In this document: piece after piece, positions 37,768 to 64,000 of the stretch
Numbering within the stretch: position 1 is the stretch's first letter
Layout of the letters: every line of letters begins with the position of its first letter
Source of the DNA: Sphyrna mokarran
Lineage: Eukaryota
NCBI GenBank assembly: GCA_024679065.1
Contig: JAGIQG010000040.1
Coordinates: 9,486,001-9,550,000, forward strand
Direction of reading: 5' to 3'
Length of the DNA: 64,000 nt
Translations under genes and position numbers: made by a program
Notes under the pieces: model-generated
What the model saw: only the letters and a program-made list of their open reading frames with translations
Database searches by the model: none
Told to the model about the DNA's origin: nothing

Positions 37768-38637
37768 TCACACAGAGCAGGTGAATGGTCTTTCCCCAGT
37801 GTGAATTCGCTGGTGTGTCCGCAGTTTGGATGACTGACTGAATCCCTTCCCACGCTGAGAGCAGGTGAACGGCCTCTCCCCCGTGTGAACTCGCTGATGC
37901 GCCTGCAGATGGAATGACTGAGTGAATCCCTTTCCGCATTGAGAGCAGATGAATGGCCTCTCCCCAGTGTGAACTCGCTGGTGTGTCTTCAAATGGAATG
38001 ACTGAGTGAATCCCTTCCCGCACACAGAACAGGTGAATGGTCTCTCCCCAGTGTGAATTCGCTGGTGTCTCCGCAGTTCAGATGACTGAATGAATCCCTT
38101 CCCACACTGAGAGCAGGTGAATGGCCTCTTCCCCGTGTGAGTTCGCTGGTGTATCTGCAGATGGGATGACTGATAGAATCCCTTCCCGCATTGAGAGCAG
38201 GTGAACGGCTTCTCCCCAGTGTGAACTCGCTGGTGCGCCTGCAGATTGGATGACTGATTGAATCCCTTCCCGCATTGAGAGCAGGTGAACGGTCTCTCCC
38301 CGGTGTGAACACGTGTGTGTGCCCGCAGATTGGACGGACAAGCAAATCCCTTTCCACACTGAGAGCAGGTGAACGGCCTCTCCCCGGTGTGAATGCGCTC
38401 ATGGGCCTGCAGGTTGGAAGATTGAGCGAACCTCTTCCCACACTGAGAACAGATAAATGGCCTTTCCCCAGTGTGAACTCGCTGGTGTGACTGCAAGCTG
38501 GATAACTGTGTGAATCCCTTCCCACACTGAGAGCAGGTGAATGGTCTCTCCCCAGTGTGGCTGCGCCGATGAGCATCCAGCAGAGAGGGGGCTTTATATC
38601 TCTTTCCACAGTCCGCACATGTCCATGATTTCTCCAT
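37768..38637 (-). CDS. Finger-only C2H2 zinc-finger protein (9 canonical fingers, one C>R finger, 11th truncated by frameshift)
   Basis: ORF 37768-38673; Kozak-like cccATGg at 38637; TGERP linkers; exon acceptor ccttttacAG at 38958-9. Confidence 0.8.
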
Positions 38638-40264
38638 GGGGCAGGTGTCCTTGCCTCTCTCTTGGGTGGACAATCAGTTGAAGCCTCGTCCACGCACTCA
38701 ATACATGTACATTCTCTCCCCACTGTGAATGGTGTGATATTTATTCAGTCAGTATACTGGAACGTTCTCACTCGTGTAGCAGTGTATGATGCTTTTCCAG
38801 TCACGTTGACATTTGAAATCTTTTCAAATCGACAGACCAGACAACCATTTCTCCTTCCAGATTCAAAGTCCAAGGGTATTCAGGTCCCAAGGAATATGAC
38901 TCTGTCTGATCTAGACCTGACATTGAGATTTCAGCCTGTGATTCCTCTTTCAATATCCTGTAAAAGGAGTTTACAAAAGTTATCAATGTCAGTACAGTAT
39001 AGAAATTCAGAACAGACAATTATAGTCTCTGTGGAACATTCTTTCTTATTTCAGTCCCAAAAAGCTGAAATCTCTATCCCACACATTCCTTCCATTCTCA
39101 CTCTGCTGTATCTAATATTCACCCTCCCAGTTTCTCCTGACGGTGCTGATTCAGGCTGATTGATAGATCCATGCTCACTGCTTCCTGTCCAGCACACAGA
39201 GACCATAACAAATAGGAACTGCAGTTGGCCATTTAACCCATTGAATCTTTTAAACTATTCAATGGGATAATTCGTTCATCTACCTCAGCATCATTTTCCC
39301 CCACACTAAACCATATATGCCTTCATATCTTCAATATCTAGAAACTAATTTCTCTCTTGAACATAGTTGATGACTGAAGCTTCACTGTCCTCAGGAGTTG
39401 AGAATTCCAAAGCTTTCCCAAACCCTTGAGTGAAGAAATCCCCCACATCTTAGCTTTTGCTCTATCTTCTTGTCTGTTCCCCTGATCCTTGACAACATTC
39501 AGTTAAAAATCTGTCTAACTGGAATATATTCAATGATCTTCAGCCTTCACTGGTCCCTGTGGAACAGAAATCCAAAATACCAAGAACCCCCTGAGGGAAG
39601 AGATGTCTGGAAATATATAACGTAACTACAGTTCCATATTACAAGATATTCAGATCCTAAAGAATATATCTGTCTAGATGTGATGGTTGAGGTTTTCATC
39701 TGCGTTTCCTTGATCAATATCCTGTGAAATAAGTTTGCAAAAGTCAAGACAGTCAATATAGGACAGAAATCCAGAACGCACAATTCTAGTTCCATGTAAC
39801 ATTCTTTCCTATTTCATTCCCAAAAAGTTGTAAATCTCTAACCATATCTATGGATTCTATTTAAAAATGAAAGTAGAAGGGCACTTGAAGAAATAAACTT
39901 TCAGAAGAATGGGGATATCGAATGGGAATGGGGGGACTGGAATGTTATACAGAGAATTAGCATGGACTCGAGTTACCAAGTGGATTCTTTCTGTGCTGTA
40001 ATGACTTTATGACTGGAAACGTATAGCATTGCTACAGTGTTATATTACAATGTAAGAAATAATAAATGTATTTTATTACAGAAACATAAATAATATATCT
40101 AATCTGGATATCATATAACAACACTAGCCATATCTCGGTCCTTTATTAATGTACTGTCCCCTTAAATGTCAGCCATCTCTTAGAGAAAACAGCCCTTTAA
40201 TTGTGAACATTAGGAAAAAGACCATCCTTTTAGACAGACATAAATGTGTCAAGCCGAGGGAGCA

Positions 40265-40750
40265 AAGGATGTTTACCAGGCTGATTCAGGGAATCGCAGC
40301 ATTGGTGTATGAGGAGAGACTGACAAGGTTAGGATTGTTTTCATTGAGTTCAAATGAAAGAGGGGGGCGGGGTCTCATACAGACTTACAAAATTCTCAGA
40401 GGTCAAGACAGGATAGATGCAGGGAGGATGTTGTCGATGGAATACAGAACCTGGGGTCACAATCTGAGCATTCAAGGTAGACCATTTAGGACAGAGGGTG
40501 GAGACATTTTTTCATCCAAAGAGTAATGACACTGTGCAGTTTATTACCACAGGAAGTAGTTGATGCCAAAATATTGACTGTATTCAAGAGGCGGCTGCAT
40601 ATAGCAGTTGGGGCGAATGGGATCAAAGGTTATGGGGGAAAAGCACAGTTAAGCTATTGGGTTAGATGATCAGCCATAATTGTAATGAATGGCGGAGTAG
40701 GCTCGAAGGATTAAATGGCCTCCTTCTGCTCCTAACTTCCATGTTTCTAT
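40265..40750 (+). mobile_element. CR1 3' fragment in a ZNF intron (mirror at about 61430-61910)
   Basis: MFTRLIQG..YEERLTRLGLFSL plus a CR1 tail. Confidence 0.8.
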
Positions 40751-40920
40751 ATCAATGTCATTAAGAGAGAGAGAGAGAGAGGAAAAGAGACCTGGGCCAA
40801 TCCCAGAGTCTGCAGCCTCCCTGGATTCACTTCCTTTCATTTCAGCTGCTGGATGTCCCCAATTTCCCCCAGAATGGGAAAAGAAATGGAAAGGTGCAGA
40901 AAAGAAAGTGTTTTACTCAC

Positions 40921-41564
40921 AGATATTGACAACAGGAAGAAGTTTGAGTCTGTCTGAAGCTTAATCTTCATTCAGAGAGAGAGCAGCAGCAGCCTTGCTG
41001 GATGGGAATGAGCCTCTGAACAAGCTCATTGTCCACTAGCGCATTCAGACAATAGGGGAGCTCTGATTGGCTAGAGGGGGCAGTGTCCTTCCCGTCTTTC
41101 AGCCTTTCCCATTGGTCAGGGCCTCAGCAAAAAAGTCAGGGAGGGGACAGGCAGCCCTGCACATGCGCAGCTTCCCCTCTCTCTTGAACATGCGCAGTCC
41201 CGGTCCGGCGGGGGGAGGGGGAGATCACCGAGCGGCTTCTCGCTCTGGGCGGAGCCGCCAGCCGCTTGTCTGGAAACCTTGGCTCGAGGAGGGGGAGGGG
41301 AACAATGGGTGGAGGCGGGGCTCCCGGGAGGGGGAGGGGAACAATGGGCGGGGGCGGGGCTCCTGGGAGGGGGAGGGGAACAATGGGCGGAGGAAGGGAA
41401 ACAATGGGCGGGGGCGGGGCTCTTGGCGACGTCACCGCAGAACTCGGAGACGTCATCGCAGAGCGGAGTGATTGGCTAATCTGGGCAGCACTCCATTATG
41501 ACGTCACAATACGGAAGTTGTCGAATGAGTTTCAGACTCAGATTTGCTCCTGTCTCTGATATCT
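40921..41564. promoter_or_regulatory. Bidirectional CpG promoter with divergent non-coding first exons (left arm)
   Basis: Outward-facing donors ATCT|GTGAGT (minus at 40920, plus at 41565); CCAAT boxes; ACATGCGCAG (NRF1-like) twice; perfect CRE TGACGTCA at 41499-41506; ETS CGGAAGT; a 4-unit GC-box/AACAATGG minisatellite. Confidence 0.7.
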
Positions 41565-42200
41565 GTGAGTAAAACACTTTCTTTACTGCCCCTTTCCATT
41601 TCTATTCTCATCCTGGGGGAAACTGGGGACCTGCAGCAACTGAAGGGCAAGGAAGTGAGTCCAGGGAAACTGCAGATTCTGGAAAGGTTGGCCCAGGTCT
41701 CTCTCTCTCTCTTAAAGACACTGACATCCTTTGCTTCCTCAGCTTGATACGTTGATTTGTTTGGCTAAAAGGATGGTCACTTTCCTAATGTTCACAATTA
41801 AAGGGGTGGTTTGCCCAGGAGATAGAAACTAGAAGCAGGAGTAGGCCATTCAGTCCTTTGCGTTTACTCCACCATTCATTATGATCATGGATGATCATCA
41901 ATTTCGATATTCTGATCCCCCCTCCGCCCCCTCCCCATCTCCTTTGATCCCCTGAACCTCAGGATTTATTCTTGAAATCATGCAGTATTTTGGCCTCAAC
42001 TACTTTCTGTGGTAGTGAATTCTACACATTCACCACTCTTTGGGTGAAGACATCTCTTCTCATTTTATTTCTAAAAGGTTTACCCCTTATCTTCAAACTT
42101 TGATCCGTGGTTCTGGACTCACCCAATATCAGGAACATTGGGAGATGGCTGACATTTAAGGAGACAGTAAATATAGAACAGAGATAAATCTAATGCTGTT

Positions 42201-42555
42201 ACATAGAACATAGAACATTACATCGCAGAACAGGCCCTTCGGCCTTCGATGTTGCACCGACCAATTAGGAACAAGCAGTGACCCTCTAACCTAAACCATT
42301 CCCCTTTCATCCATAAACTTATCTACTAACCTCTTAAACGCCACCAAACTTGGCGCATCTACAACTGACACAGGCAAGGCATTCCATACCCTTACCACCC
42401 TCTGGGTAAAGAACCTACCTCCGACATCTGTCCTAAAACCACCACCCCTTAATTTAAAGCTATGTCCCCTCGTGCTAGCTTTCTCCATCCTAGGAAAAAG
42501 GCTATCACTGTCCACCCTATCTAAACCTCTAATCATCTTATATGTTTCAATAAGG
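42201..42555 (-). mobile_element. Left-arm-specific CR1 3' insertion
   Basis: The mirror site at about 59745-59755 is empty (GCTGTACATGGTACAG); the insert has a (TTCTATG)n tail. Confidence 0.85.
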
Positions 42556-43159
42556 TGGTACAGGTTAGATATACAATAATGGTTCTGTGATAAAATACAT
42601 TTATTAGTTCTAGCCTTGTAATATACCAATGCAACTACATTATAAACTTCCAGTCAGAGTCATTACCACATAGGCGGAGTCCATTCAGCAACTCGAGTCC
42701 ATGGCGATTCTCTGGAGGACAATACAGTCAATCCCACTCTGCTTCTATAATCTCTTCTCCCTACAAGTTTATTTCCTTCAGATGTCTAACCCAATTTATT
42801 TGAAATTATTCTTCTCCACTTCAACCACTGGTGTAATTTTCTGATTATGCCCACTTGCTGTCTAAATAAAGTTCTTCCTTGCACATGCCCCGCCCCCCCC
42901 GCCCCCACTCGATCTCTGATTAAAAGGTACAGTACTCTCTATCAAACATTTTCTATACAATTAATTGTGCATCTGGCGAGATATATGTACATTTACTGAA
43001 TAAAACGTTTGGGTGTCTGACTCCAGAGCCTTGTATTGATAGATTCGCATGACTCACTCATTCATTAGAATTGAGAGGATGAATATTAGATTCAGCAGAG
43101 TGAGAATGGTGGGAGAGTGTCTGACATGGAGATTTTCAGATTTTGGGATTTTTAAAATT

Positions 43160-43420
43160 TAATCGTGTCACAAGTAGGCTTACATTAACTCTGCAATGAA
43201 GTTACTGCGGAAATCCCCTAGTTGCCACACTGAGGTACATTGAGTGAGAATTTAGTATGGCCAGTGCAGTTAACCAGCATGTCTTTCGGACTGTGGCAGG
43301 AAACCTGAGAAGGAAATCCATGCAGATACAAGGAGAATGTGCAGTCTCTGGACAGACGGTGATCCAAGCTGGAATCAAAGCCAGATCCCTGGCGTTGTGA
43401 GAGAGCAACACACTGTGCCA
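43160..43420 (-). mobile_element. HE1/V-type SINE (mirror at about 58905-59150)
   Basis: tggcacagtg head, gggatctggctttgattccagcttgg B-box region, and core. Confidence 0.7.
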
Positions 43421-43829
43421 AATAAGGGAGGAAAGAATGCTCTGTAGAAATTTGAATTGTCTGTTTTGAATTTCTATTCTGTTCTGCCAGAAATGACTTT
43501 TGTAAACCTTTTTACAGGATATCAGAAGGTGAGGATTTACAGACCGAAATTTTGAATGAAATATCACATCAACATTTGACAGAGTCACTCAATTCATTGG
43601 GAGCTGACTATCATCAGTCTTTGAATCTCGAAGGAGAAATGTTTGTCTGTTTTGACTGATACAGAAGATTTTAAACATCAGTCTGACTGGAAAAGCACCG
43701 AAAACACATGCACATCTCAGTGAGAGTGTTTCAGCTTTAATTAGTTACACAATTTTCCAAAACCCTTCGGAACTGGGAAAGACACTACACGCGTTCTCTG
43801 CGTGTGGACACCTCAGTTGATTCTTGAAT

Positions 43830-44423
43830 ATGGAGAGACACAAGGACACCTGTACCATGGAAAAACCATGGAAATGTGCGGAATGTGGGAAGGGCTTCAT
43901 TACCCCATCAAGCCTGGAAAGTCATCGACGCATTCACACAGGGGAGAGACCGTTTGCTTGCTCTGACTGTGGGAAGGGCTTCACTCAGTTATCCCATCTG
44001 TGGACACACCAGCGAGTTCACACAGGGGAGAGGCCTTTTATCTGCATTGACTGTGGGAAGGGATTCACTCAGTCATCCAACCTGCTCGGACACCAGCGAG
44101 TTCACACTGGAGAGAGGCCATTCATCTGCACTGAGTGTGGAAAGGGCTTCAGAGATTCATCCACTCTGCAGAAACACCAGAGAGTACACACTGGGGAAAG
44201 ACCATTCAGCTGCTCTGATTGTGGGAAGCGATTCCGAGATTCCTCCACCCTGGTGAGACACCATCAATTTCATACCGGGGAGAGACCGTTCATCTGCTCT
44301 GACTGTGGGAAGGGATTCACTCAGTTATCCACCTTGCAGACACACCAGCGAGTTCACACCAGGGAAAGCCGTTCACCTGCTGTCAGTGTGGGAAGGGATT
44401 CACTCGGTCAACACTCCTGCTGA
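43830..44423 (+). CDS. C2H2 zinc-finger protein, 6 fingers (7th lost by a 1-nt deletion)
   Basis: Acceptor tttttacAG at 43516-7; [16 protein letters not shown] start. Reads agggaaagccg versus agggagaggccg in the mirror copy. Confidence 0.75.
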
Positions 44424-44859
44424 GACATCAGCGAGTTCACAATTCCTTCCGTGGGTTGGATTGTGCTGTTAATCACATCCAAGACTGATCCATGTCCATT
44501 CTGACAGTTGGTGAAATGGGGGAGGGTCGGAGGGTTTCTTTCTGCTGGACTGGCCAATCTCCCAACTTTGCTTCCAGTGGGTCGATGCTCTTTGAGCCAG
44601 GGTGAGCACATTCCCATGAAAATGATCTACTTAAGCCAATGAAAGACATTTATGATACTTGGTTGTAAATAATGTGTTTCCCCCTACTACATGCAAGCTT
44701 AAAATAAATGCAAAAAGAGCTAAAAGAAATGCTGCTGTCTAGCAGCATCTGTGGAAAAAATATCTTGGAGCAAAAGGCAAAGGGAGAGGTATGAGTTGTG
44801 CGAATAAATACAGCATTGATCCAGAGTAAGTTTAATGGCTGAATAAAGGACAGCTCTCC

Positions 44860-45120
44860 CTGTATCTCTCCAGTTAAGGCAATCAGCTGAAGCCTGATTC
44901 ATATACATGTGGATGGTGTCTCCCTGCTGTGAATGGTGCAATGTTTTTTTTTCAGGATGGGTAAGCTGTTAAACCTCTTTTCCTAGTCAGTGCACTCGGG
45001 TATGTTGAAGGAGAATTTAGTATGGCCAGTGCAATTAGCCAGCATGTCTGTCGGACTGTGGTAGGAAATCTGGTTGTGCTTGTGTGTGTGTTAGTACTTC
45101 CCAGTCACACAAATGTTTAG
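44860..45120 (-). pseudogene. Relic of a ZNF coding-exon 5' region (mirror at about 57200-57460)
   Basis: Aligns to 50155-50330 (aatcag.tgaa..ctgtgaatg.tgc.atg.ttttcagg..tcagtgca..ttcccagtcacac). No fingers remain. Confidence 0.55.
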
Positions 45121-46979
45121 AAGGGAAAAAAATTGAAAAGGAAGAATTTGTAGGGCTGTGGGGAAAAAGCAGAGCAGTTGGATGAATCACAGAGTCCTTT
45201 CAAAGAGATAGCAGGGACATGAAGAGCTGAATGGTCTCCTCCTGCAGCCTGTCAATCTCAGCTCCTGCTTTTATGCAGGTTAAAAGGGCCAAATTTCAGT
45301 GCAGCCTCTTCACTGTATATGTATTTAAAGAGACAGGTTTCTCTTTAGCTGAATGACTGATAGCAATTTGTTGAAGGTCCTTTTCCCACTCAGTTCTCCA
45401 GCACCTTTCTGTCTCGCTATTAATCCGATGCCCAGGACAGCTTCCCAACTGGGGCACAGACCCTATTATTCTCAACTAAATTCAGCACTCAGCTCTGTCA
45501 CCCAGCTGTCATTGACAGGAGCAATAGAGAAACAGAAAAGTGTCCCAGGTTCAAATGGGAAGTCAAAACTTGTGGCTTTAAATGAACTGTTAAGATCAAC
45601 AATTTAAAAAATTGTTTAAATTAAAGAGTCACATGACAAAACTTAAAGTTTATGGCATTTATTCCAACAAACTGGAAGAAACAATGATTAAACATTTTTT
45701 TTGTAGGGAACATTGCCCTTAAACTTTAAAATTGAACTTTGCCTTTTGCTCTTAACACAATCAAATATCTCAGTCAATGGTTATATTTTACGCTGTCTTG
45801 GAATGTTGACACTCAATTCTCAAAGATTTTTCACTCCCGAGGGTTTATTTCCATTGTTTTCCTTTCCCAGTCTTGCAACATTTAATCCCAGACTGTCTTC
45901 ACAGTGACAATACACCTGGACATTTTCTCAGTAACACAAGCAAGGCAAATCTTCCAGCCTTGTTTCACAATCCTCAGGAATTTATGACCAACATTTGATA
46001 GAGGAGCACAAGTAGGCCATTTGGCCCCTCTGAGTCGAAGGAGGCCATTTGGACACTCTGAGTCTGCTCCTCCATTTATTTAGATCATGGCTGATCTGTT
46101 TATGTTAAGTTCCTCATATTCTAGTTCCAGATCCGATATTTTTGATTTCCTTATGCAACAAAAGTTGGTGTAAAGGCAAAATTCTGCTGTTGAGGGAATC
46201 TGAGAGAAAAACACAAAATGCTGGATAATCTCAGCAAGTCTGACAGCCTCTGTAGAGAGAGAATAGAGACAACATTTCAAGTCAGGGTGACCCTTTGTCC
46301 AAAATGAAGACAAGGAAAATCAGACAAAATTCATACTGTGAGGATCAAGAATTGGGAAGCAACCGATTAAACCTGCACCACACTCAATGCATTTGTATCA
46401 TTTCTTAAATAGAAGACAAAGCTGCAGCCAATATTCAAGATACAGACTCAGCAATGCCCCGTATAACTGAAGCAGAACAACTTCTATGTTCAATTTCTCT
46501 CATAATAAAGGATTGCATTCCATTTGTAAGAACTTTGATTAATTTGAACTAAGATTTAGGGGGTTCTCTTGTGTATAATAACCTCCCCAATTGTAAATCA
46601 CACCAGGTTCCAGTGTCTTAACCATATGACAAGAAAGAACACTTTAAAAGGTGAATTCAGAAACTTTATTAACCATTAAAAATGTAACAAGTCAGAAAGT
46701 TAAAAAGCAAAGTATTGATTAACAGTTAACAGAGAAAGCTTCACTTTAATGATTGAATAGACTTCTCTCCATCTCTCTCAAACCAGGACATGAAGTGACA
46801 ACTCTGAAAACATGGATAACTTATAAAACCAACAGCTCTCAACATCTGTCTGTAAACATATCTTCCTCGTCCTCTCTGTACCAAATTGCTTCTCAAAACC
46901 ACTTTTTTATACTTTAAAAATTTCAAAAGTCCATCTTAGCAATTCCCATAAATCTGGTGAGTTTCTGGTGATTTAAAAA

Positions 46980-47345
46980 CACATCGTTAGTGTACGCTTG
47001 ACCTGGACCATTTGATGGGCAACACAACAGCTCAGTGACTATCGCTGTGCTGTGCAGATACATGGATTTGGGCATGTGTCTGTGGGAATTTGCGCATTCT
47101 CCCCGTGCTTGCGTGGGTTTTCTCCGAGCGCTCCGGTTTCCTCCCACATCCCAAAGATGTGCTCTTAGGCTAATTGGCAAAACAAATTCTCCCTAAATTG
47201 TTTCAAATTTGGTTTTTAATCCATAGATCTATAAACATGGACAGGGATTGCGGGTAGAGGTGGGAACATCGGGGTGGCGGCGCGGGCTCGTTGGGTCGAA
47301 GGGCCTGTTTCCCGTGCTGTTTTGTTCTGTGTTCTAAATCTAATT
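46980..47345 (+). mobile_element. 5'-truncated copy of the 3' UTR of the 30.7-32.2 kb LINE family (mirror at about 54860-55225)
   Basis: Aligns to 31845-32230; absent from the paralogous site at about 37040. Confidence 0.75.
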
Positions 47346-52917: not shown

Positions 52918-55900
52918 TTCCAGAGGTTTGGATTCTGCTGTTACTGGTTCAGCTCTCAATTACTGCCAAGACTACATTTTATTCATTCTCACAGTTGGTC
53001 AAAGGAAAGGGTTTCTTTGTGTTGGACTGGCAGGACTCATGATTTTATCTCCAGTGGACGGATGATCTTTGAATCTTGTTGCAAATACCTGGTTTTAAAT
53101 TTCAGAAGGATAAAAGACTGACAGGGCAATTGAAAGTTAAGATATATTTAGTCCCATTTCTATTTGCAACACTGCCTAAATGCCCATCCAATTTCCTTTG
53201 CAATGATTTATTGCCTCCACTTTACGCTCGTAGGCAGCAAGTTCCAGATCATTACCATTCGCCACATCAAAATATTCTTCTTCACATCCCCCCGCCTGCC
53301 CCCCGCAACATCCTAAAAGCATAAACCTGTGATCCCCTCGCCCTTGTCCTGTCAGCTAATGGGAACAGCTTTTTTTTGTCCACCTTATCTAACTATGTCA
53401 GAATCTTGTCCAACTCTATAGCAAATCTCCCCTCAACCTCCTTTGCTCCAAGAGGAACAACCCCAGCCTGACTTTGACAATAAAGAACAAACCAACAGAA
53501 TATGTTAGTACCTGAAATAAAATGGGAATGTTGAATTTCTGTTTTAAAGATATTGTGAATATATTGTCCTGGACAATAATGAAATTGGGTAATGCAGCTT
53601 GGATGTGGTTGAATGGAATATATCAATCTGGTATCCACCTACAGTTAGTGAAATTCTGGAATATGTATCTGGAAATCACTCCCTAATAGCACTGTGGATG
53701 TATTTACAGGCATGGTAGCAGTTCAGGAAGGCAGTGTTGGGGTTGACCATGGCCGAGGCAGCTACACACAGCCACATATTCTGTTATAATTGAAGGACTG
53801 CAGATTGAATGTGAAGCATTATGAGACTGGACTGTCTTGACCACATTCCTGTGACTGCTCAGTTTCTGCAATCACAGACCATTAACGCTGCTTAGCAGAG
53901 CCTCCAGGGAGGACCCAGTGAGAATATTTACTGGGAATGAGTTGGAATTAAACTTATCCAAGGACCAGCTGGTGTTAAGCAGATGATATTTCTGAATCTG
54001 TAAAAAGGGGAGTCTGACAAATCAACAAACAGTGGTAAGTAGTTGGTTAAGAAATCAAGGTGCGTTCTCAGGCATTGTTTAAATTAATTTATCCTAAACT
54101 TGTGATAAAAACTGTGACTGATTTGTGATCTGATAGTCAGTGAAGTGATGGTATTCTCCAAGTAGCACTGGACTGAAAAGCGGACCCTCTGAGAGTAGAT
54201 CCGAATGGTTATTATCTTACCCCATCATGGCCAGTGAAAAATCAGAGCTTGAGTGGGGATCAGACAGTCACTTATCTGCCATTTGGAAACTAAAAGCAAG
54301 AAACTTATTGATTAAAATGATTAGAGGATAGAGCCAACCTTTTGAATCTGATTGACACTTTGTAAGAGCGCTAATGAAGGGTTATCCAGACTCGAAACAT
54401 TGGCTCTATTCTCTCTCCACAGATGCTGTCAGACCTGCTGAGATTTTCCAGCATTTTCTGTTTTTTTGTTTCAGATTCCAGTATCCGCAGTATTTTACTT
54501 GTGTGATAAAATGATCAGGTCTGATTGGAATCCCCATGACCCTCCCGCAAAACAGAGAGAGTGGTAGGAGAAGAGAAAAAAGGAGAAGGATGATAAAGTC
54601 TGTGTTCTGATTCTCTCAGCCCAAGGAGAATAAACAAAATGAGTGAACCAGTTTATAAAGAATAGAAATTACCCATCCCCAACAAAAACTGATCAAATTT
54701 AATCGGTTGAGGAATATAACAAAAAAAAATTAATAGATGAAGTTTAAAATCATTTGTTTTGTTTTAAACTTGTGTGAAGTGATGTAATTGTGTGCCAAGT
54801 TTTTGCTGCTCACTCCCCACTCCTTTAGGTTCTGTGGAAAAGTTAATCCTTTAAGTAGGAATTAGATTTAGAACACAGAACAAAACAGCACGGGAAACAG
54901 GCCCTTCGACCCAACGAGCCCGCGCCGCCACCCCGATGTTCCCACCTCTACCCGCAATCCCTGTCCATGTTTATAGATCTATGGATTAAAAACCAAATTT
55001 GAAACAATTTAGGGAGAATTTGTTTTGCCAATTAGCCTAAGAGCACATCTTTGGGATGTGGGAGGAAACCGGAGCGCTCGGAGAAAACCCACGCAAGCAC
55101 GGGGAGAATGCGCAAATTCCCACAGACACATGCCCAAATCCATGTATCTGCACAGCACAGCGATAGTCACTGAGCTGTTGTGTTGCCCATCAAATGGTCC
55201 AGGTCAAGCGTACACTAACGATGTGTTTTTAAATCACCAGAAACTCACCAGATTTATGGGAATTGCTAAGATGGACTTTTGAAATTTTTAAAGTATAAAA
55301 AAGTGGTTTTGAGAAGCAATTTGGTACAGAGAGGACGAGGAAGATATGTTTACAGACAGATGTTGAGAGCTGTTGGTTTTATAAGTTATCCATGTTTTCA
55401 GAGTTGTCACTTCATGTCCTGGTTTGAGAGAGATGGAGAGAAGTCTATTCAATCATTAAAGTGAAGCTTTCTCTGTTAACTGTTAATCAATACTTTGCTT
55501 TTTAACTTTCTGACTTGTTACATTTTTAATGGTTAATAAAGTTTCTGAATTCACCTTTTAAAGTGTTCTTTCTTGTCATATGGTTAAGACACTGGAACCT
55601 GGTGTGATTTACAATTGGGGAGGTTATTATACACAAGAGAACCCCCTAAATCTTAGTTCAAATTAATCAAAGTTCTTACAAATGGAATGCAATCCTTTAT
55701 TATGAGAGAAATTGAACATAGAAGTTGTTCTGCTTCAGTTATACGGGGCATTGCTGAGTCTGTATCTTGAATATTGGCTGCAGCTTTGTCTTCTATTTAA
55801 GAAATGATACAAATGCATTGAGTGTGGTGCAGGTTTAATCGGTTGCTTCCCAATTCTTGATCCTCACAGTATGAATTTTGTCTGATTTTCCTTGTCTTCA

Positions 55901-56964
55901 TTTTGGACAAAGGGTCACCCTGACTTGAAATGTTGTCTCTATTCTCTCTCTACAGAGGCTGTCAGACTTGCTGAGATTATCCAGCATTTTGTGTTTTTCT
56001 CTCAGATTCCCTCAACAGCAGAATTTTGCCTTTACACCAACTTTTGTTGCATAAGGAAATCAAAAATATCGGATCTGGAACTAGAATATGAGGAACTTAA
56101 CATAAACAGATCAGCCATGATCTAAATAAATGGAGGAGCAGACTCAGAGTGTCCAAATGGCCTCCTTCGAGCAGACTCAGAGGGTCCAAATGGCCTACTT
56201 CTGCTCCTCTGTCAAATGTTAGTCACAAATTCCTGAGAATTGTGAATCAAGGCTGGAAGATTCGCCTTGCTTGTGTTACTGAGAAAATGTCCAGGTGTAT
56301 TGTCACTATGAAGGATAGTCTGGGATTAAAAGTTTGCCAGATTGGGAAAGGAAAACAATGGAAATAAACCCACAGGAGTGAAAAATCTTTTGAGAATTGA
56401 GTGTCAACATTCCAAGATAATGTAAAATATAACCATTGACTAGATATTTGATTGTGTTAAGAGCAAAAGGTAAAGTTCAATTTTAAAGTTTAAGAGCAAT
56501 TTTCCGTACAAAAAAAATGTTAGTCATTGTTTCTTCCAGTTTGTTGGAGTAAATGCCATAAACTTGAAGTTTTGTCATGTGATTCTTTAATTTACTCAGA
56601 GTTTCGAATTCATTTTTTTAAATTGTTGATCATTACAGAGATCTGAACAGTTCATTTAAAGCCATAAGTTTTGACTTCCCATTTGAACCTGGAACACCTT
56701 TCTGTTTCTCTGTTGCTCCTGTCAGTGACAGCCGGGTGACAGAGCTGAGGGCTGAATTTAGTTGAGAATAATGGGGCCTGTGTCCCAGTTGGGAAACTGT
56801 CCTGGTCGTCGCACTAATAGAGAGACAGAAAGGTGCTGGAGAACTGAGTGGGAAAAGAACCTTCAACAAATAGTTATCAGTCATTCAGCTAAAGAGAAAT
56901 CTGTCTCTTTAAATACATATACAGGGAAGAGGCTGCACTGAAATCTGGCCCATTTAACCTGCAT

Positions 56965-57060
56965 AAAAGCAGTAAAAGTAAAAAACAAAAAAAAAAAAAA
57001 AAAATGGAAAAACAAAAGAAAAAAAAAAAAAAAAAAAAAAAGAACAAAAAAAAAAAGCAG
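56965..57060 (+). mobile_element. Right-arm-specific poly(A)-only insertion with an AAAAGCAG target-site duplication
   Basis: The left arm (about 45265-45275) has a single AAAAGCAG. The right arm has two, flanking about 80 nt of A-rich sequence. Confidence 0.75.
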
Positions 57061-57836
57061 GAGCTGAGATTGACAGGCTGCAGGAGGGGACCATTCAGCC
57101 CATCATGCCCCTGCTATCTCTTTGAAAGGACTCTGTGATTCATCCGACTGCTCTGCTCTTTCTCCACAGCCCTACAAATTCTTCCTTTCAATGTTTTTCC
57201 CTTTTAAACATTTGTGTGACTGGAAAGATACTAACACACACACAAGCACAACCAGGTTTCCTGCCACAGTCCGACAGACATGCTGGTTAACTGCACTGGC
57301 CATACTAAATTCTCCCTCAATGTACCCGAGTGCACTGACTATGAAAAGAGGTTTAACAGCTTACCCATCCAGAAAAAAAAACATTGTACCATTCACAGCA
57401 GGGAGAGACCATCCACATGTATATGAATCAGGCTCCAGCTGATTGCCTTACCTGGAGAGATATAGGGAGAGCTGTCCTTTATTCAGCCATTAAACTTACT
57501 CTGGATCAATGCTTTATTTATTCAGACAACTAATACCTCTCCCTTTGCCTTTTGCTCCAAGATATTTTTTCCACAGATGCTGCCAGACAGCAGCATTTCT
57601 TTTAGCTCTTTTTGCATTTATTTTAAGCTTGCATGTAGTAGGGGGAAACACATTATTTACCACCAGGTATGATAAATGTCTTTCATTGGCTTATGTAGAT
57701 GATTTTCCTGGGAATGTGCTCACCCTGGCTCAAAGAGCATCAGCCCACTGGAAGCAAAATTGGGAGACCGGCCAGTTCAGCAGAAAGAAACCCTCCGACC
57801 CTCCCCCATTTCACCAACTGTTAGAATGGAGACGGA

Positions 57837-58496
57837 TCAGTCTTGGATGTGATTAACAGCACAATCCAACCCATGGAAGGAATTGTGAACTCGCTGATGT
57901 CTCAGCAGGAGTGTTGACCGAGTGAATCCCTTCTCACACTGAGAGCAGGTGAACGGCCTCTCCCTGGTGTGAACTCGCTGGTGTGTCTGCAAGGTGGATA
58001 ACTGAGTGAATCCCTTCCCACAGTCAGAGCAGATGAACGGTCTCTCCCCGGTATGAAATTGATGGTGTCTCACCAGGGTGGAGGAATCTCGGAATCGCTT
58101 CCCACAATCAGAGCAGCTGAACAGCCTTTTCCCAGTGTGTACTCTCTGGTGTTTCTGCAGGGTGGATGAATCTCTGAAGCCCTTTCCACACTCAGTGCAG
58201 ATGAATGGCCTCTCTCCAGTGTGAACTCGTTGGTGTCCGAGCAGGTTGGATGACTGAGTGAATCCCTTCCCACAGTCAATGCAGATAAAAGGCCTCTCCC
58301 CCGTGTGAACTCGCTGGTGTGTCCGCAGATGGGATAACTGAGTGAAGCCCTTCCCACAGTCAGAGCAAGCAAATGGTCTCTCCCCTGTGTGAATGCGTCG
58401 ATGACTTTCCAGGCTTGATGGGGTAATGAAGCTCTTCCCACATTCCGCACATTTCCAAGGTTTTTCCATGGTACAGGTGTCCTTGTGTCTCTCCAT
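57837..58496 (-). CDS. C2H2 zinc-finger protein, 7 fingers (mirror of 43830-44423)
   Basis: Open ORF 57837-58502 (221 aa from TTG); acceptor at about 58809-10. Confidence 0.85.
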   Translation of the reverse strand: MERHKDTCTMEKPWKCAECGKSFITPSSLESHRRIHTGERPFACSDCGKGFTQLSHLRTHQRVHTGERPFICIDCGKGFTQSSNLLGHQRVHTGERPFICTECGKGFRDSSTLQKHQRVHTGKRLFSCSDCGKRFRDSSTLVRHHQFHTGERPFICSDCGKGFTQLSTLQTHQRVHTRERPFTCSQCEKGFTRSTLLLRHQRVHNSFHGLDCAVNHIQD

Positions 58497-60397
58497 ATTC
58501 AAGAATCAACTGAGGTGTCCACGCGCAGAGAACGTGTGTAGCGTCTTTCCCAGTTCTGAAGGGTTTTGGAAAATTGTGTAACTAATTAAAGCTGAAACAC
58601 TCTCACTGAGATGTGCATGTGTTCTCAGTGCTTTTCCAGTCAGACTGATGTTTAAAATCTTCTGTAGCAGTCAAAACAGACAAACATTTCTCCTTCGAGA
58701 TTCAAAGACTGATGATATTCAGCTCCCAATGAATTGAGTGACTCTGTCAGACATTGATGTGATGTTTCATTCAAGATTTCGGTCTGTAAATCCTCACCTT
58801 CTGATATCCTGTAAAAGGGTTTACAAAAGTCATTTCTGGCAGAACAGGATAGAAATTCAAAACAGACAATTCAAATTTCTACAGAGCATTCTTTCCTCCC
58901 TTATTTGGCACAGTGTGTTGCTCTCTCACAGCACCAGGGATCTGGCTTTGATTCCAGCTTGGATCACCATCTGCACATTCTCCTTGTGTCTGCATGGATT
59001 TCCTTCTCAGGTTTCCTGCCACAGTCTGAAAGATGTGCTGGTTAACTGCACTGGCCATACTAAATTCTCCCTCAATGTACCTGAGTGCGGCAACTAGGGG
59101 ATTTTCGCAGTAACTTCATTGCAGTGTTAATGCAAGCCTACTTGTGACACGATTAAATTTTAAAAATCCCAAAATCTGAAAATCTCCATGTCAGACTCTC
59201 CCACCATTCTCACTCTGCTGAATCCAATATTCATCTCTCAATTCTAATGAATGAGTGAGTCATGCGAATCTATCAATACAATGCTCTGGAGTCAGACACC
59301 CAAACGTTTTATTCAGTAAATGTACATATATCTCACAGATGCACAATTAATTGTATAGAAAATGTTTGACAGAGAGTACTGTACCTTTTAATCAGAGATT
59401 GAGTTGGGGGGGGGGCATGTGCAAGGAAGGACTTTATTTAGACAACAAGTGGCCATAATCAGAAAATCACACCAGTGGTTGAAGCGCAGAAAAATAATTT
59501 CAAATAAATTGGGTGAGACATCTGAAGGAAATAAACTTGTAGAGAAAAGAGATTATAGAAGCAGAGTGGGATTGACTGTAGTGTCCTCCAGAGAATCGCC
59601 ATGGACTCGAGTTGCTGAATAGACTCCGCCTATGCCGTAATGACTCTGACTGGAAATTTATAATGTAGTTACAGTGGTATATTACAAGACTAGCACTAAT
59701 AAATGTATTTTATCACAGAACCATTATTGTACATCTAATCTGTACCATGTACAGCATTAGATTTATCTCTGTTCTATATTTACTGTCTCCTTAAATGTCA
59801 GCCATCTCCCAATGTTCCCGATATTGGGTGAGTCCAGAACTAGGGATCAAAGTTTGAAGATAAGGGGTAAACCTTTTAGAAATAAAATGAGAAGAGATGT
59901 CTTCATCCAGAGAGTGATGAATGTGTGCAATTCACTACCACAAAAAGTAGTGGAGGCCAAAATACTGTGTGATTTCAAGAATAAACTAGATAGAGCTCTT
60001 GAGGTTCAAGGGATCAAAGGAGATGGGGAGGGGGCGGAGGGGGGATCAGAATATGAAATTGATGATCATCCATGATCATAATGAATGGTGCAGTAAACGC
60101 AAAGGACTGAACGGCCTACTCCTGCTTCTAGTTTCTATCTCCTGGGCAAACCGCCCCTTTAATTGTGAACATTAGGAAAGTGACCATCCTTTTAGCCAAA
60201 CAAATCAACGTATCAAGCTGAGGAAGCAAAGGATGTCAGTGTCTTTAAGAGAGAGAGAGAGAGACCTGGGCCAACCTTTCCAGAGTCTGCAGTTTCCCTG
60301 GACTCACTTCCTTGCCCTTCAGTTGCTGCAGGTCCCCAGTTTCCCCCAGGATGAGAATAGAAATGGAAAGGGAGAGTAAAGAAACTGTTTTACTCAC

Positions 60398-61262
60398 AGA
60401 TATCAGAGACAGGAGCAAGTCTGAGTCTGAAACTCATTCGACAACTTCCGCATTGTGACGTCAAAATGGAGGGCTGACAGGATTAGCCAATCACTCTGCT
60501 CTGCGATGACGTCTCCGAGTTCTGCGGTGACGTCGCCAAGAGCTCCGCCCCCGCTCATTGTTTCCCTTCCTCCGCCCATTGTTCCCCTCCCGGGAGCCCC
60601 GTCCCCACCCATTGTTCCCTTCCCGGGAGCCCCGCCCCCGCCCCTTGTTCCCCTCCCCCTCCCGGGAGCCCCGCCCCACACCCATTGTTCCCTCCCGGGA
60701 AAAAATAAAAACGAAAAGTTCCCCGTCCCCACCCATTGTTCACTTCCGGGACCCCGCCCCCGCCCCTTGTTCCCCTCCCCCTCCGGGGCCCCGCCCCCCT
60801 CCATGTTCCCTTCCCGGGAGCCCCGCCCCCGCCCATTGTTCCCCTCCCCCTCCCGGGAGCCCCGCCCCCCCCATTGTTCCCCTCTCCCTCCTCGAGCCAA
60901 GGTTTCCAGACAAGCGGCTGGCGGCTCCGCCCAGAGCGAGAAGCCGCTCGGTGATCTTCCCCTCCCCCCCCGCCGGACCGGAACTGCGCATGTCCAAGGG
61001 GCAGGGGAAGCTGCGCATGTGCAGGGCTGCCTGTTCCCCCTCCCCGACTTTCTTGCTGAGGCCCTGACCAATGGGAAACGCTGAAAGACCGGAAGAACAC
61101 TGCCCCCTCTAGCCAATCAGAGCTCCCCCATTGTCTGAATGCGCCAGTGGACAATGAGTTTGTTCAGAGGTTCATTCCCATCCAGCAAGGCTGCTGCTGC
61201 TCTCTCTCTGAATGAAGATTAAGCTTCAGACAGACTCAAACTTCTTCCTGTTGTCAACATCT
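60398..61262. promoter_or_regulatory. Bidirectional CpG promoter, right-arm copy with an expanded minisatellite
   Basis: Donors at 60397 (minus) and 61263 (plus); CRE at 60456-63; about 10 repeat units. Confidence 0.7.
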
Positions 61263-63542
61263 GTGAGTAAAACACTTTCTTTTCTGCACCTTTCCATTTC
61301 TTTTCCCATTCTGGGGGAAACTGGGGACATCCAGCAGCTGAAATGAAAGGAAGTGAATCCAGGGAGGCTGCAGACTCTGGGATTGGCCCAGGTCTCTCTT
61401 CCTCTCTCTCTCTCTTAATGACATTGATACAGAAACATGGAAGTTAGGAGCAGAAGGAGGCCATTTAATCCTTCGAGCTTGCTCCGCCATTCATTACAAT
61501 TATGGCTGATCATCTAACCCAATAGCTTAACTGTGCTTTTCCCCCATAACCTTTGATCCCATTTGCCCCAAGTGCTATATGTAGCTGCCTCTTGAATACA
61601 GTCAATATTTTGGCATCAACTACTTCCTGTGGTAATAAATTGCACAGTGTCATTACTCTTTGGATGAAAAAATGTCTCCACCCTCTGTCCTAAATGGTCT
61701 ACCTTGAATGCTCAGATTGTGACCCCAGGTTCTGTATTCCATCGACAACATCCTCCCTGCATCTATCCTGTCTTGACCTCTGAGAATTTTGTAAGTCTGT
61801 ATGAGACCCCGCCCCCCTCTTTCATTTGAACTCAATGAAAACAATCCTAACCTTGTCAGTCTCTCCTCATACACCAATGCTACGATTCCCTGAATCAGCC
61901 TGGTAAACATCCTTCGCTCCCTCGGCTTGACACATTTATCTGTCTGTCTAAAAGGATTGTCTTTTTCCTAATGTTCACAATTAAAGGGCTGTTTTCTCTC
62001 TAAGAGATGGCTGACATTTAAGGGGACAGTGCATTAATATAAGACCAAGATATGGCTAGTGTTGTTCTATGATATCCAGATTAGATATATTATTTATGTT
62101 TCTGTAATAAAATACATTTATTATTTCTTACATTGCAATATAACACTAGCAATGCTATACGTTTCCAGTCATAAAGTCATTACAACACAGAAAGAATCCA
62201 CTTGGTAACTCTAGTCCATGCTAATTCTCTGTATAACATTCCAGTCCCCCCATTCCCACTCGATATCCCCATTCTTCTGAAAGTTTATTTCTTCAAGTGC
62301 CCTTCTACTTTCATTTTTAAATAGAATCCATAGATATGGTTAGAGTTTTACAACTTTTTGGGAATGAAATAGGAAAGAATGTTACATAGAAACTAGAATT
62401 GTCTGTTCTGGATTTCTGTCCTATATTGACTGTCTTGACTTTTGCAAACTTATTTCACAGGATATTGATCAAGGAAACGCAGATGAAAACCTCAACCATC
62501 ACATCTAGACAGATATATTCTTTAGGATCTGAATATCTTGTAATATGGAACTGTAGCTACGTTATATATTTCCAGACATCTCTTCCCTCAGGGGGTTATT
62601 GGTATTTTGGATTTCTGTTCCACAGGGACCAGTGAAGGCTGAAGATCATTGAATATATTCCAGTTAGACAGATTTTTAACTGAATGTTGTCAAGGATCAG
62701 GGGAACAGACAAGAAGATGGAGCAAAAGCTAAGATGTGGGGGATTTCTTCACTCAAGGGTTTGGGAAAGCTTTGGAATTCTCAAATCCTGAGGACAGTGA
62801 AGCTTCAGTCATCAACTATGTTCAAGAGAGAGATTGGTTTCTAGATATTGAAGATATGAAGGCATATGGTTTAGTGTGGGGGAAAATGATGCTGAGGTAG
62901 ATGAACGAATTATCCCATTGAATAGTTTAAAAGATTCAATGGGTTAAATGGCCAACTGCAGTTCCTATTTGTTATGGTCTCTGTGTGCTGGACAGGAAGC
63001 AGTGAGCATGGATCCATCAATCAGCCTGAATCAGCACCGTCAGGAGAAACTGGGAGGGTGAATATTAGATACAGCAGAGAGAGAATGGAAGGAATGTGTG
63101 GGATAGAGATTTCAGCTTTTTGGGACTGAAATAAGAAAGAATGTTCCACAGAGACTAGAATTGTCTGTTCTGAATTTCTATACTGTACTGACATTGATAA
63201 CTTTTGTAAACTCCTTTTACAGGATATTGAAAGAGGAATCACAGGCTGAAATCTCAATGTCAGGTCTAGATCAGACAGAGTCATATTCCTTGGGACCTGA
63301 ATACCCTTGGACTTTGAATCTGGAAGGAGAAATGGTTGTCTGGTCTGTCGATTTGAAAAGATTTCGAATGTCAACGTGACTGGAAAAGCATCATACACTG
63401 CTACACGAGTGAGAACGTTCCAGTATACTGACTGAATAAATATCACACCATTCACAGCTGGGAGAGAGTGTACATGTATTGAGTGCGTGGACGAGGCTTC
63501 AACTGATTGTCCACCCAAGAGAAAGGCAAGGACACCTGCCCC

Positions 63543-64000
63543 ATGGAGAAATCATGGACATGTGCGGACTGTGGAAAGAGATATAAAGCCCCTTCTCTGC
63601 TGGATGCTCATCGGCGCAGCCACACTGGGGAGAGACCATTCACCTGCTCTCAGTGTGGGAAGGGATTCACACAGTTATCCAGCCTGCAGTCACACCAGCG
63701 AGTTCACACCGGGGAAAGGCCATTTATCTGTTCTCAGTGTGGGAAGAGGTTCGCTCAATCTTCCAACCTGCAGGCCCATGAGCGCATTCACACCGGGGAG
63801 AGGCCGTTCACCTGCTCTCAGTGTGGAAAGGGATTTGCTTGTCCGTCCAATCTGCGGGCACACACACGTGTTCACACCGGGGAGAGACCGTTCACCTGCT
63901 CTCAATGCGGGAAGGGATTCAATCAGTCATCCAATCTGCAGGCGCACCAGCGAGTTCACACTGGGGAGAAGCCGTTCACCTGCTCTCAATGCGGGAAGGG
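63543..64000 (+). CDS. C2H2 zinc-finger protein, mirror of 37768-38637, truncated by the window end
   Basis: Acceptor at 63221-2, ATG at 63543 ([13 protein letters not shown]..), open to the window end. Confidence 0.85.

What the first reader, a model, noticed from the sequence alone, without database searches (positions are those of the whole stretch)
38180..64000. >=26-kb zinc-finger palindrome with stratified arm identity (about 100% inner 5 kb, diverged middle, about 98-99% outer)
Seen: 46035-51033 and 51172-56170 mirror each other with no net indel, and every spot I checked was identical, including homopolymer lengths. Identity drops abruptly at 46035/56170 (about 7 mismatches in the next 100 nt) beside a ~35-bp tandem duplication. 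It recovers to about 98-99% at 38-40 kb. The outer arms have arm-specific insertions, so the palindrome is old. Inference: patchy arm-to-arm gene conversion, as established for mammalian sex-chromosome palindromes, is homogenising a ZNF cluster. A secondary re-duplication of the centre is an alternative.
Basis: partly seen in the sequence, partly recalled or inferred. Interest (0 to 1): 0.85.

Follow-up and report, generated by a model that had tools for sequence, protein, structure and literature searches.

The report
Three-layered zinc-finger gene palindrome, probably shark
A block of zinc-finger genes lies next to its own mirror image, and the 5 kb nearest the centre are letter-perfect while the rest has drifted apart, which looks like one copy recently overwriting the other but could not be checked against sequencing reads.

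Summary
Arms 46035-51033 and 51172-56170 are 4999 nt with 0 mismatches and 0 indels around a 138-nt spacer. The mirror homology runs out to 38180/64000, where the window ends. Segmentation gives three strata: outer 44/2800 = 1.57%, middle 220/4675 = 4.71%, inner 0/4990. Indel events number 6, 25 and 0 inside the identical arms.

The pattern fits at least two separate arm-to-arm copying events in an old palindrome. The host is probably an elasmobranch, not a mammal. Nothing here bears on sex linkage.

The rival, re-duplication of a once single-copy central gene unit, stays open. The inner stratum begins only 80 nt outside the start of a paralogous ZNF unit.

Internal evidence argues against a simple fold-back or haplotype mis-join but does not exclude one.

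First-reader notes report other large palindromes elsewhere in this genome. None has been followed up.

Verdict: a new member of a known kind, of moderate interest.

The parts
38180..51033 (.). Left arm as far as the window allows (12,854 nt). Its true outer end is unknown because the partner runs off the window at 64000.
51172..64000 (.). Right arm, cut by the window end (12,829 nt).
51034..51171 (.). 138-nt spacer. Its first 19 nt and last 21 nt continue the arm homology across two 1-nt indels. The core of about 98 nt is asymmetric and has no other copy in the window.
46035..51033 (.). Inner stratum, left copy: 0 mismatches and 0 indels against 51172-56170.
51172..56170 (.). Inner stratum, right copy.
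40988..46034 (.). Middle stratum, left copy. Partner is 56171-61195. Mismatches 220/4675 = 4.71% as segmented on a 25-column grid, 25 indel events, ts:tv 155:65.
56171..61195 (.). Middle stratum, right copy.
38180..40987 (.). Outer stratum, left copy. Partner is 61196-64000. Mismatches 44/2800 = 1.57%, 6 small indel events, ts:tv 32:12.
61196..64000 (.). Outer stratum, right copy.
46010..46064 (.). Old tandem duplication (period 28, 88% matches) straddling the identity step. The outer unit differs between arms; the inner unit is identical.
56136..56201 (.). Mirror copy of that tandem duplication (period 33, 93% matches).
49288..50130 (-). ZNF exon C: 280-aa ORF, 10 C2H2 stretches. An in-frame stop lies 6 codons upstream of the ATG.
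52075..52917 (+). ZNF exon C', identical to C. The two point away from the centre.
43824..44423 (+). ZNF exon B, left copy: 199 aa. A 1-nt indel at 44365 shifts the frame of the last finger.
57837..58502 (-). ZNF exon B', right copy: 221 aa, 7 fingers. Against B, dN 4/421.2 and dS 7/118.8.
37768..38673 (-). ZNF exon A: 301 aa. Only 38180-38673 has a visible partner.
63507..64000 (+). ZNF exon A', cut by the window end. It differs from A at 4 of 494 nt.
41001..41500 (.). G+C-rich block (GC 0.634, CpG o/e 0.59) with a 39-nt tandem repeat, between the divergent exons A and B. The outer/middle stratum change-point lies beside it.
60501..61000 (.). Mirror G+C-rich block (GC 0.696, CpG o/e 0.79). 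It carries the right-only 218-nt repeat expansion at 60592-60809.
42200..42552 (.). 353-nt block present only in the left arm. It is an interspersed repeat with copies at 16388-16735 (88%) and 28713-28911 (77%).

Best explanation
A natural, old inverted duplication of a three-gene C2H2 zinc-finger block, ordered A(-) B(+) C(-) | spacer | C'(+) B'(-) A'(+), in a genome that is probably an elasmobranch's.

The arms have diverged to about 4.7% with many indels and a repeat insertion. One arm has since been copied onto the other at least twice.

- **Earlier event.** It reset the outermost visible 2.8 kb or more, now 1.57% apart.
- **Latest event.** A single long tract of about 5 kb runs from a repeat-derived tandem duplication at 46035/56170 to within about 20 nt of the end of arm homology at the spacer. 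No substitution has occurred in it since.

The inferred mechanism is repair of a break in one arm by invasion of the other arm of the same chromatid. Long-tract synthesis then runs towards or away from the centre. Annealing at the homologous point resolves the event without crossover.

Shown: the structure and the three strata. Inferred: that the structure exists in the animal, the direction of copying, and the repair route.
For: - Perfect 4999-nt arms with a sharp step at the boundary.
- Three strata, each internally homogeneous.
- Differences between the arms look evolutionary, not technical: ts:tv 155:65 and 32:12; 31 indel events including a 353-nt interspersed repeat present in one arm only; 3 of 7 simple-sequence tracts differ in length.
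- Exon B has dS 5.9% against dN 0.95%. Both copies have therefore been kept under purifying selection over a divergence that matches the non-coding rate.
- The spacer is asymmetric, with diverged remnants of arm homology at both ends. This is expected of an old centre.
- The tandem-duplication units at the step differ from each other and from either arm's outer unit. They are not an untrimmed assembly overlap.
- Kilobase tracts are documented in palindromes (PMC3723533).
- Centre-proximal perfect identity with distal decay is documented in small autosomal inverted gene pairs of Caenorhabditis (PMC1803023, Results read).
Against:
- A 138-nt gap between perfectly symmetric arms also fits the working definition of a long-read fold-back artefact, which is within 200 bp on the opposite strand (PMC12870357).
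- If the assembler traversed one unitig twice, small real differences between the inner arms would have been erased. '100%' may then overstate the identity.
- The tract stops 20 nt short of the end of homology. Those 20 nt carry two indels but no substitution, which is odd for sequence that is merely old and unconverted.
- The step lies 80 nt from a gene-unit boundary (chance about 0.013). That favours the re-duplication rival.
- At the epaulette-shark mutation rate, 4.7% would take about 3.5e7 generations. That is uncomfortably old.
Confidence: 0.55

Rival explanations
1. Secondary inverted re-duplication. The old palindrome comprised only the A-B blocks, and ZNF unit C sat as a single copy in its spacer. 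A break at the spacer/right-arm junction was repaired by invading the left arm and copying inward through unit C. This created C' and replaced the rest of the old spacer. The 100% stratum is then one gene unit plus about 80 nt of old arm.
For: - Non-coding paralogy of the inner arm with unit A (36160-39202) and with 34017-35889 starts at 46115, only 80 nt inside the step at 46035. The chance of such proximity is about 0.013.
- The cluster visibly grows by unit duplication in both orientations.
- Two 1-nt indels in the last 20 nt beside 4999 clean nt would fit error-prone termination of copying. That step is inference.
- Fold-back priming and template switching at inverted repeats are established routes to inverted duplications (PMC10622511 and PMC10766186, search listings only; PMC6103520, abstract read).
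Against: - It needs the new copy to resolve at exactly the mirror position in the right arm. Homology-guided resolution allows that, but the event then becomes a special case of gene conversion.
- The 14 + 5 nt of inverted homology inside the spacer is long for a chance microhomology.
- The inner end of the paralogy (50716) lies 317 nt from the end of the stratum.
Confidence: 0.17
2. Assembly artefact at the centre. The outer arms are real inverted paralogues. The inner 10.1 kb was built from a fold-back chimeric long read, from a single-read gap fill, or from one repeat unitig traversed twice. The true inner arms are then absent, different, or less than 100% alike.
For: - Perfect symmetry and a 138-nt gap match the fold-back criterion (PMC12870357: within 200 bp; 0.55-0.6% of ONT genomic reads).
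- First-reader notes report many large palindromes in this assembly. They include one folded on a 100-N gap, one with a 139-bp spacer and one with an identity gradient (all unchecked).
- No read support could be obtained.
Against: - A fold-back read gives a symmetric turn. This spacer has a core of about 98 nt that is asymmetric, and arm ends that differ by indels.
- The junction of the right outer arm with the inner sequence must exist in reads for any overlap assembler to build it. That requires a second genuine copy of at least the outer part of the inner arm.
- The window has no N.
- HiFi data show virtually no fold-backs (PMC12870357), but the sequencing platform of this assembly is unknown to me.
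Confidence: 0.12
3. Two haplotypes of one locus joined head to head. The arms would then be alleles, and the inner 5 kb a shared identical-by-descent segment.
For:
- Other mirror structures are noted in this assembly.
- It would also give two kinds of flank on one inner sequence.
Against: - Divergence of 1.6-4.7%, 31 indel events and a 353-nt repeat difference over 7.5 kb is far above what I would expect between shark alleles.
- The directly measured shark mutation rate is 7e-10 per bp per generation (PMC10587355).
- The turn would still need an unsupported junction at the right end of the spacer.
Confidence: 0.06

Closest known systems
Large palindromes of mammalian sex chromosomes (human Y P1-P8; primate and mouse X palindromes)
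   Same: - Inverted arms above 8 kb carrying multicopy genes around a spacer.
- Arm-to-arm gene conversion without crossover.
- Multi-kilobase tracts (PMC3723533).
- Instability concentrated at the centre, and small spacers least stable (PMC8327919).
   Different: - Those arms are above 99% to 99.9% identical along their whole length. Here the whole-arm ungapped identity is 97.9% and only 5 kb is perfect.
- The host is probably an elasmobranch.
- The genes are C2H2 zinc fingers.
- Sex linkage is unknown.
Actively maintained inverted-repeat gene pairs of Caenorhabditis (hsp-70 F44E5.4/5, hsp-16 locus; Zhao et al. 2007, PMC1803023)
   Same: - Autosomal divergent or convergent paralogue pairs.
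- Spacers of 126 and 414 bp.
- Identity of 100% near the centre that falls off distally: one pair is 59.6% identical globally but 100% over the first 297 nt.
   Different: - The arms there are hundreds of bases to about 2 kb. Here they are at least 12.8 kb with a 5-kb perfect core.
- Maintenance there was shown by comparison between species, which I could not do.
Fold-back artefacts of long-read sequencing (Heinz, Meyerson and Li 2026, PMC12870357)
   Same: Two halves on opposite strands of one locus, within 200 bp of each other and symmetric about the midpoint.
   Different: - Here the symmetric core is flanked on both sides by diverged inverted homology.
- The turn has an asymmetric core of about 98 nt.
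Template switching between imperfect inverted repeats that homogenises the arms (PMC8604942, abstract read); fold-back priming at breaks (PMC10622511, search listing only)
   Same: One arm is rewritten from the other, starting at the centre, with no second chromosome involved.
   Different: That mechanism is described for short repeats of tens of bases. A 5-kb version has not been shown in anything I read.

Membership tests
Sex-chromosome-type large palindrome (criteria of Jackson et al. 2021: arms of at least 8 kb, at least 99% arm identity) | Inverted arms of at least 8 kb around a spacer | tested here: met
   Arms of at least 12,854 and 12,829 nt; spacer 138 nt. Criteria taken from PMC8327919.
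Sex-chromosome-type large palindrome (criteria of Jackson et al. 2021: arms of at least 8 kb, at least 99% arm identity) | Arm-to-arm identity of at least 99% over the arms | tested here: not met
   264 mismatches in 12,465 aligned columns = 97.9%, plus 31 indel events. Only 46035-51033 passes.
Sex-chromosome-type large palindrome (criteria of Jackson et al. 2021: arms of at least 8 kb, at least 99% arm identity) | Location on a sex chromosome | not testable with these tools
Palindrome maintained by arm-to-arm gene conversion (any chromosome) | Arms of one origin show blocks of sharply different divergence that selection does not explain | tested here: met
   Three strata at 1.57%, 4.71% and 0%. 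Mismatches are Poisson-like within strata. dS of exon B is 5.9%, matching the non-coding rate.
Palindrome maintained by arm-to-arm gene conversion (any chromosome) | Arms within a species are more alike than orthologous arms between species | not testable with these tools
Palindrome maintained by arm-to-arm gene conversion (any chromosome) | The structure exists on single DNA molecules | not tested
0 of 10 exact ORF look-ups hit.
Long-read fold-back artefact or mirror misassembly | Two halves on opposite strands within 200 bp, symmetric about the midpoint | tested here: met
   4999 + 138 + 4999 nt. Criterion from PMC12870357.
Long-read fold-back artefact or mirror misassembly | No genuine second copy: flanks are one locus read twice, and the turn is symmetric | tested here: not met
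   The flanks are two different sequences, 4.7% apart with indels. The spacer core of about 98 nt is asymmetric.
Long-read fold-back artefact or mirror misassembly | The junction is unsupported by independent reads | not tested
Transposable element with long terminal inverted repeats | Target-site duplication, with homology ending at the element's ends | tested here: not met
   Inverted homology continues straight through 46035/56170 into the outer arms. There is no direct repeat at the two ends.

The most novel reading that the evidence does not exclude
The perfect core is not a one-off repair event. It would be the visible product of a centre-out homogenising process: snap-back pairing of the two arms on one strand during replication or resection, nucleated across a short spacer of about 140 nt. 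The partner arm would then be corrected by mismatch repair or template switching.

That would be a kilobase-scale version of quasi-palindrome correction. It would act recurrently on the multigene clusters (ZNF, IgM and others) of this slowly mutating genome. It would explain why first-reader notes list several other large palindromes, one with a 139-bp spacer and one with an identity gradient.
Probability: 0.1. Interest if true: 0.7.

Novelty: new member of a known kind. Interest (0 to 1): 0.35.

Why it matters
If real, this is a natural record of at least two dated copying events in one palindrome, outside mammals and possibly outside sex chromosomes. Both tract ends are visible to the base, which is rare: in the well-studied palindromes the arms are too alike to show tract ends (PMC3723533).

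It would show that a 5-kb perfect inverted repeat with a spacer of about 100-140 nt is tolerated in a vertebrate germ line. It would also show that zinc-finger clusters can be homogenised in mirror orientation.

If it is an artefact, it flags a class of mirror errors in this assembly. That would affect the immunoglobulin-cluster palindromes noted elsewhere in the same genome.

Tried and rejected
**Independent support was sought and not obtained.**
- The look-up of sequencing runs found one strong holder (X1, 0.66 of 560 sampled words) and three raw Illumina runs under the same species label.
- An exact look-up of 10 ORF translations found 0 of 10. Four of them span a step or the junction between spacer and right arm.
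- One findings look-up with coordinates beyond the window was rejected as out of range.

**Readings considered and rejected.**
- A transposon with 5-kb terminal inverted repeats. There is no target-site duplication, and homology runs through the ends.
- Purifying selection as the cause of perfect identity. The arm is 0/4990 across mostly non-coding sequence, and exon dS matches the neutral rate.
- The boundary tandem duplication as an untrimmed assembly overlap. The inner unit matches neither arm's outer unit.
- Many small conversion patches. There is no over-dispersion within strata.

**Analyses that gave nothing.**
- A tighter date from fast-mutating tracts was not possible. The inner arm holds only a T9 and an A8 run.

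**Literature.**
- A search for shark + palindrome + gene conversion found 14 papers. None, by title and abstract start, concerns a shark palindrome.
- Searches likewise found none on shark or zinc-finger palindromes.
- Supplements were closed. The heterozygosity values of PMC9826928 sit in figures and supplements that I did not see.

Full report

Yes. The repeat finder on 36000-64000 returned 66 inverted pairs, of which the 25 longest were shown. The longest has arms 46035-51033 and 51172-56170: 4999 nt, 100% complementary, 138 nt apart. A direct comparison found 0 differences in 4999 positions, and the window has no N.

I aligned 36000-51102 against the reverse complement of 51103-64000 with MAFFT. 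Homology runs without a break from the centre to 38180/64000, where the window ends. The visible palindrome is therefore 25,821 nt, with arms of 12,854 and 12,829 nt. Its true size is unknown.

**2. Shape of the identity profile**

In 250-nt bins, identity is 96.8-100% at 38180-40929. It falls to 91-99% between 40930 and 45929, is 96.8% in the bin that holds the step, and is 100% from 46180 to 50929.

A penalised-likelihood segmentation on a 25-column grid returns three segments.

| Stratum | Left-arm coordinates | Mismatches / aligned | Divergence | Indel events |
|---|---|---|---|---|
| Outer | 38180-40987 | 44 / 2800 | 1.57% | 6 |
| Middle | 40988-46043 | 220 / 4675 | 4.71% | 25 |
| Inner | 46044-51033 | 0 / 4990 | 0% | 0 inside; one 1-nt indel exactly at the inner edge |

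- The last eight mismatches lie at 45947-46025.
- The last difference of all is a 5-nt indel at 46034/56175.
- Within the outer and middle strata, mismatch counts per 100 nt are close to Poisson. Variance/mean is 1.06 and 1.21, and 773 and 239 of 2000 permutations reach the observed value.
- The picture is three clean layers, not many patches.
- The chance of 0 in 4990 is 10^-104 at the middle rate and 10^-34 at the outer rate.

**3. Anatomy**

Each arm holds three C2H2 zinc-finger exons.
- A: 37768-38673, minus strand.
- B: 43824-44423, plus strand.
- C: 49288-50130, minus strand.
- The mirror copies are C' 52075-52917 (+), B' 57837-58502 (-), and A' from 63507 (+), which is cut by the window end.

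A and B point away from a G+C-rich block with tandem repeats at 41001-41500. Its mirror lies at 60501-61000. The change-point between the outer and middle strata lies next to this block.

C and C' point away from the spacer. No CpG-rich block lies between them. C has an in-frame stop six codons upstream of its ATG, at a place where A and B read on.

The step at 46035/56170 lies inside an old tandem duplication, 46010-46064 with period 28 and 56136-56201 with period 33. Its two units differ from each other at three or more positions. The outer unit also differs between the arms.

The spacer has no other copy in the window. Its ends continue the arm homology for 14 + 5 nt across two 1-nt indels. 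That leaves an asymmetric core of about 98 nt.

**4. Are the arm differences evolutionary?**

They look so.
- Transitions outnumber transversions 155:65 in the middle stratum and 32:12 in the outer.
- The left-only 353-nt block at 42200-42552 is an interspersed repeat. Copies lie at 16388-16735 (88%) and 28713-28911 (77%).
- Of seven simple-sequence tracts in the outer and middle strata, three differ in length between the arms.
- Exon B against B' has dN = 4/421.2 (0.95%) and dS = 7/118.8 (5.9%). Exon A against A' has dN 1/380.8 and dS 3/111.2.
- Both B copies have therefore been under purifying selection. The synonymous rate matches the non-coding rate of their stratum.
- The left B copy has lost its last finger to a 1-nt indel at 44365.

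**5. Which organism?**

- The closest protein by identity to exon C is from the shark Mustelus asterias: 78% over 67% of the query.
- Next come the stingray Hemitrygon akajei at 64-66% and a gar protein at 64%. The search listed 120 of 3907 proteins with E <= 1e-30.
- An ORF at 11803-12702 is a GPR139-like receptor.
- Unchecked first-reader notes on the same genome mention VNAR, IgM clusters and V-D1-D2-J miniloci.

I take the host to be an elasmobranch, which is probable but not proven.

**6. Could I test that the structure exists in the animal?**

No.
- The look-up of sequencing runs gave one strong holder kept as contigs (X1, 0.66 of 560 words) and three raw Illumina runs of the same species label.
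- 0 of 10 exact ORF look-ups, four of them across junctions, were in the protein collection.

All that follows on reality is internal evidence.

**7. Artefact or real?**

Points for an artefact:
- A symmetric pair of halves 138 nt apart meets the working definition of a long-read fold-back, which is within 200 bp on the opposite strand. Such reads make up 0.55-0.6% of ONT genomic reads and virtually none of HiFi reads (PMC12870357, passages read).
- First-reader notes list many other big palindromes in this assembly. One is folded on a 100-N gap, one has a 139-bp spacer and one has an identity gradient. None has been followed up.

Points against:
- A fold-back turn should be symmetric. This one has an asymmetric core and arm ends that differ by indels.
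- The inner sequence is joined to two different outer flanks, 4.7% apart. An overlap assembler can only build that if a second genuine copy of at least the outer part of the inner arm exists.
- The tandem duplication at the step is not an untrimmed overlap. Its inner unit matches neither arm's outer unit.
- A head-to-head join of two haplotypes would need alleles 1.6-4.7% apart, with 31 indel events and a repeat insertion. [quoted passage not shown] The measured shark mutation rate is 7e-10 per bp per generation (PMC10587355).

One caveat remains. If the assembler walked one unitig twice, small real differences between the inner arms would have been erased. The step itself would still be real.

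**8. Mechanism**

The arms share one origin, so unequal divergence needs later copying between them.

My best reading (0.55) is at least two non-crossover events. An older one covers the outermost 2.8 kb or more. The latest is a single tract of about 5 kb ending near the centre. Tracts with a mean minimum of 2068 bp and a maximum above 9 kb are reported for human palindrome P6 (PMC3723533). A break in one arm, invasion of the other arm on the same chromatid, long synthesis and annealing would give this result. That route is inference.

With 0 differences in 4999 nt and the epaulette-shark rate, the 95% upper bound on the age of the last event is about 4.3e5 generations. Across the confidence interval of that rate the bound runs from 2.1e5 to 2.1e6 generations. 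'Recent' is therefore relative.

The same rate would put the outer and middle strata at about 1.1e7 and 3.5e7 generations. That is implausibly old. Either the rate is higher here or something else adds differences. I leave this unexplained.

**9. The main biological rival (0.17)**

Local BLAST shows that the inner arm is one ZNF gene unit. It is paralogous in direct orientation to unit A:
- 46115-46953 with 36160-36988, 82%.
- 47353-47828 with 37055-37515, 83%.
- 50470-50716 with 38943-39202, 81%.
- It is also paralogous to a further unit at 34017-35889.

The paralogy begins at 46115, 80 nt inside the step. The chance of being that close is about 0.013.

This fits a history in which unit C was a single copy in the spacer of an older A-B palindrome and was then copied in mirror image, with the copying resolved 80 nt into the old arm. 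The diverged 14 + 5 nt inside the present spacer argue the other way, for old arms that reached the centre. The window alone cannot decide.

**10. Comparison with what is known**

- It works like the gene-converting palindromes of mammalian sex chromosomes. It fails their 99% whole-arm criterion: 97.9% here (criterion in PMC8327919).
- The closer analogue in kind is the set of maintained inverted gene pairs of Caenorhabditis. Those have spacers of 126-414 bp and identity that is perfect near the centre and decays outward (PMC1803023, Results read). They are on a ten-fold smaller scale.
- Rearrangement concentrated at palindrome centres, with small spacers least stable, is described for primate X palindromes (PMC8327919).
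- Arm homogenisation by template switching is described for short inverted repeats (PMC8604942, abstract).
- Searches for shark or zinc-finger palindromes in the held library found no paper on the subject by title or abstract.

**11. Verdict**

- The finding is a new member of a known kind, of moderate interest (0.35), held down mainly because its existence on real molecules is untested.
- The boldest reading not excluded is a recurrent centre-out homogenising process across short spacers in this genome's gene clusters. I give it a probability of about 0.1.

Noticed in passing
window 34017-39202 and 46115-50716: The ZNF cluster is built of gene units about 3-4.6 kb long that share non-coding flanks at 77-83% identity in direct orientation: units at 34017-35889, 36160-39202 and 46115-50716. 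Unit B at about 43441-44600 is inverted. The cluster therefore grew by both tandem and inverted unit duplication.
   Followed up: partly
window 50131-50160 (minus strand, upstream of exon C) and mirror: Exon C/C' has an in-frame stop six codons upstream of its ATG, at a place where exons A and B read on. No CpG-rich block lies between C and C'. The identical pair may lack its own 5' exons or promoter.
   Followed up: partly
window 44365 versus 57960: A 1-nt indel shifts the frame of the last finger in the left copy of exon B (199 aa against 221 aa on the right). The two arm copies are no longer equivalent.
   Followed up: partly
window 11803-12702 (+): An intact 299-aa 7TM ORF (Pfam 7tm_1, E 1.9e-18). 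Its nearest Atlas clusters are named 'probable G-protein coupled receptor 139'.
   Followed up: partly
window 30694-31728 (+): A 344-aa ORF with a reverse-transcriptase domain (RVT_1, E 5.8e-12), probably a LINE remnant. A fragment about 200 nt long just downstream of it recurs in both inner arms at 84% identity.
   Followed up: no
window 38662-39159 (+) and 63021-63518 (-): A 165-aa ORF is kept open in both arms, with 3 amino-acid differences by eye, and has no Pfam match. It is probably a chance ORF in the 98.4% stratum.
   Followed up: no
run X2: A run of only 313 million letters, labelled as a different organism, holds 0.28 of the sampled words of 50450-56449. That is too much for a single-copy locus at that depth.
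   Followed up: no
other pieces of the same genome (earlier notes): First-reader notes list several further large palindromes: IgM and IgH clusters, one with a 139-bp spacer, one 43 kb long with an identity gradient, and one folded on a 100-N gap. 78 of 1227 notes match 'palindrome invert'. This is either a habit of the genome or a systematic assembly error.
   Followed up: no
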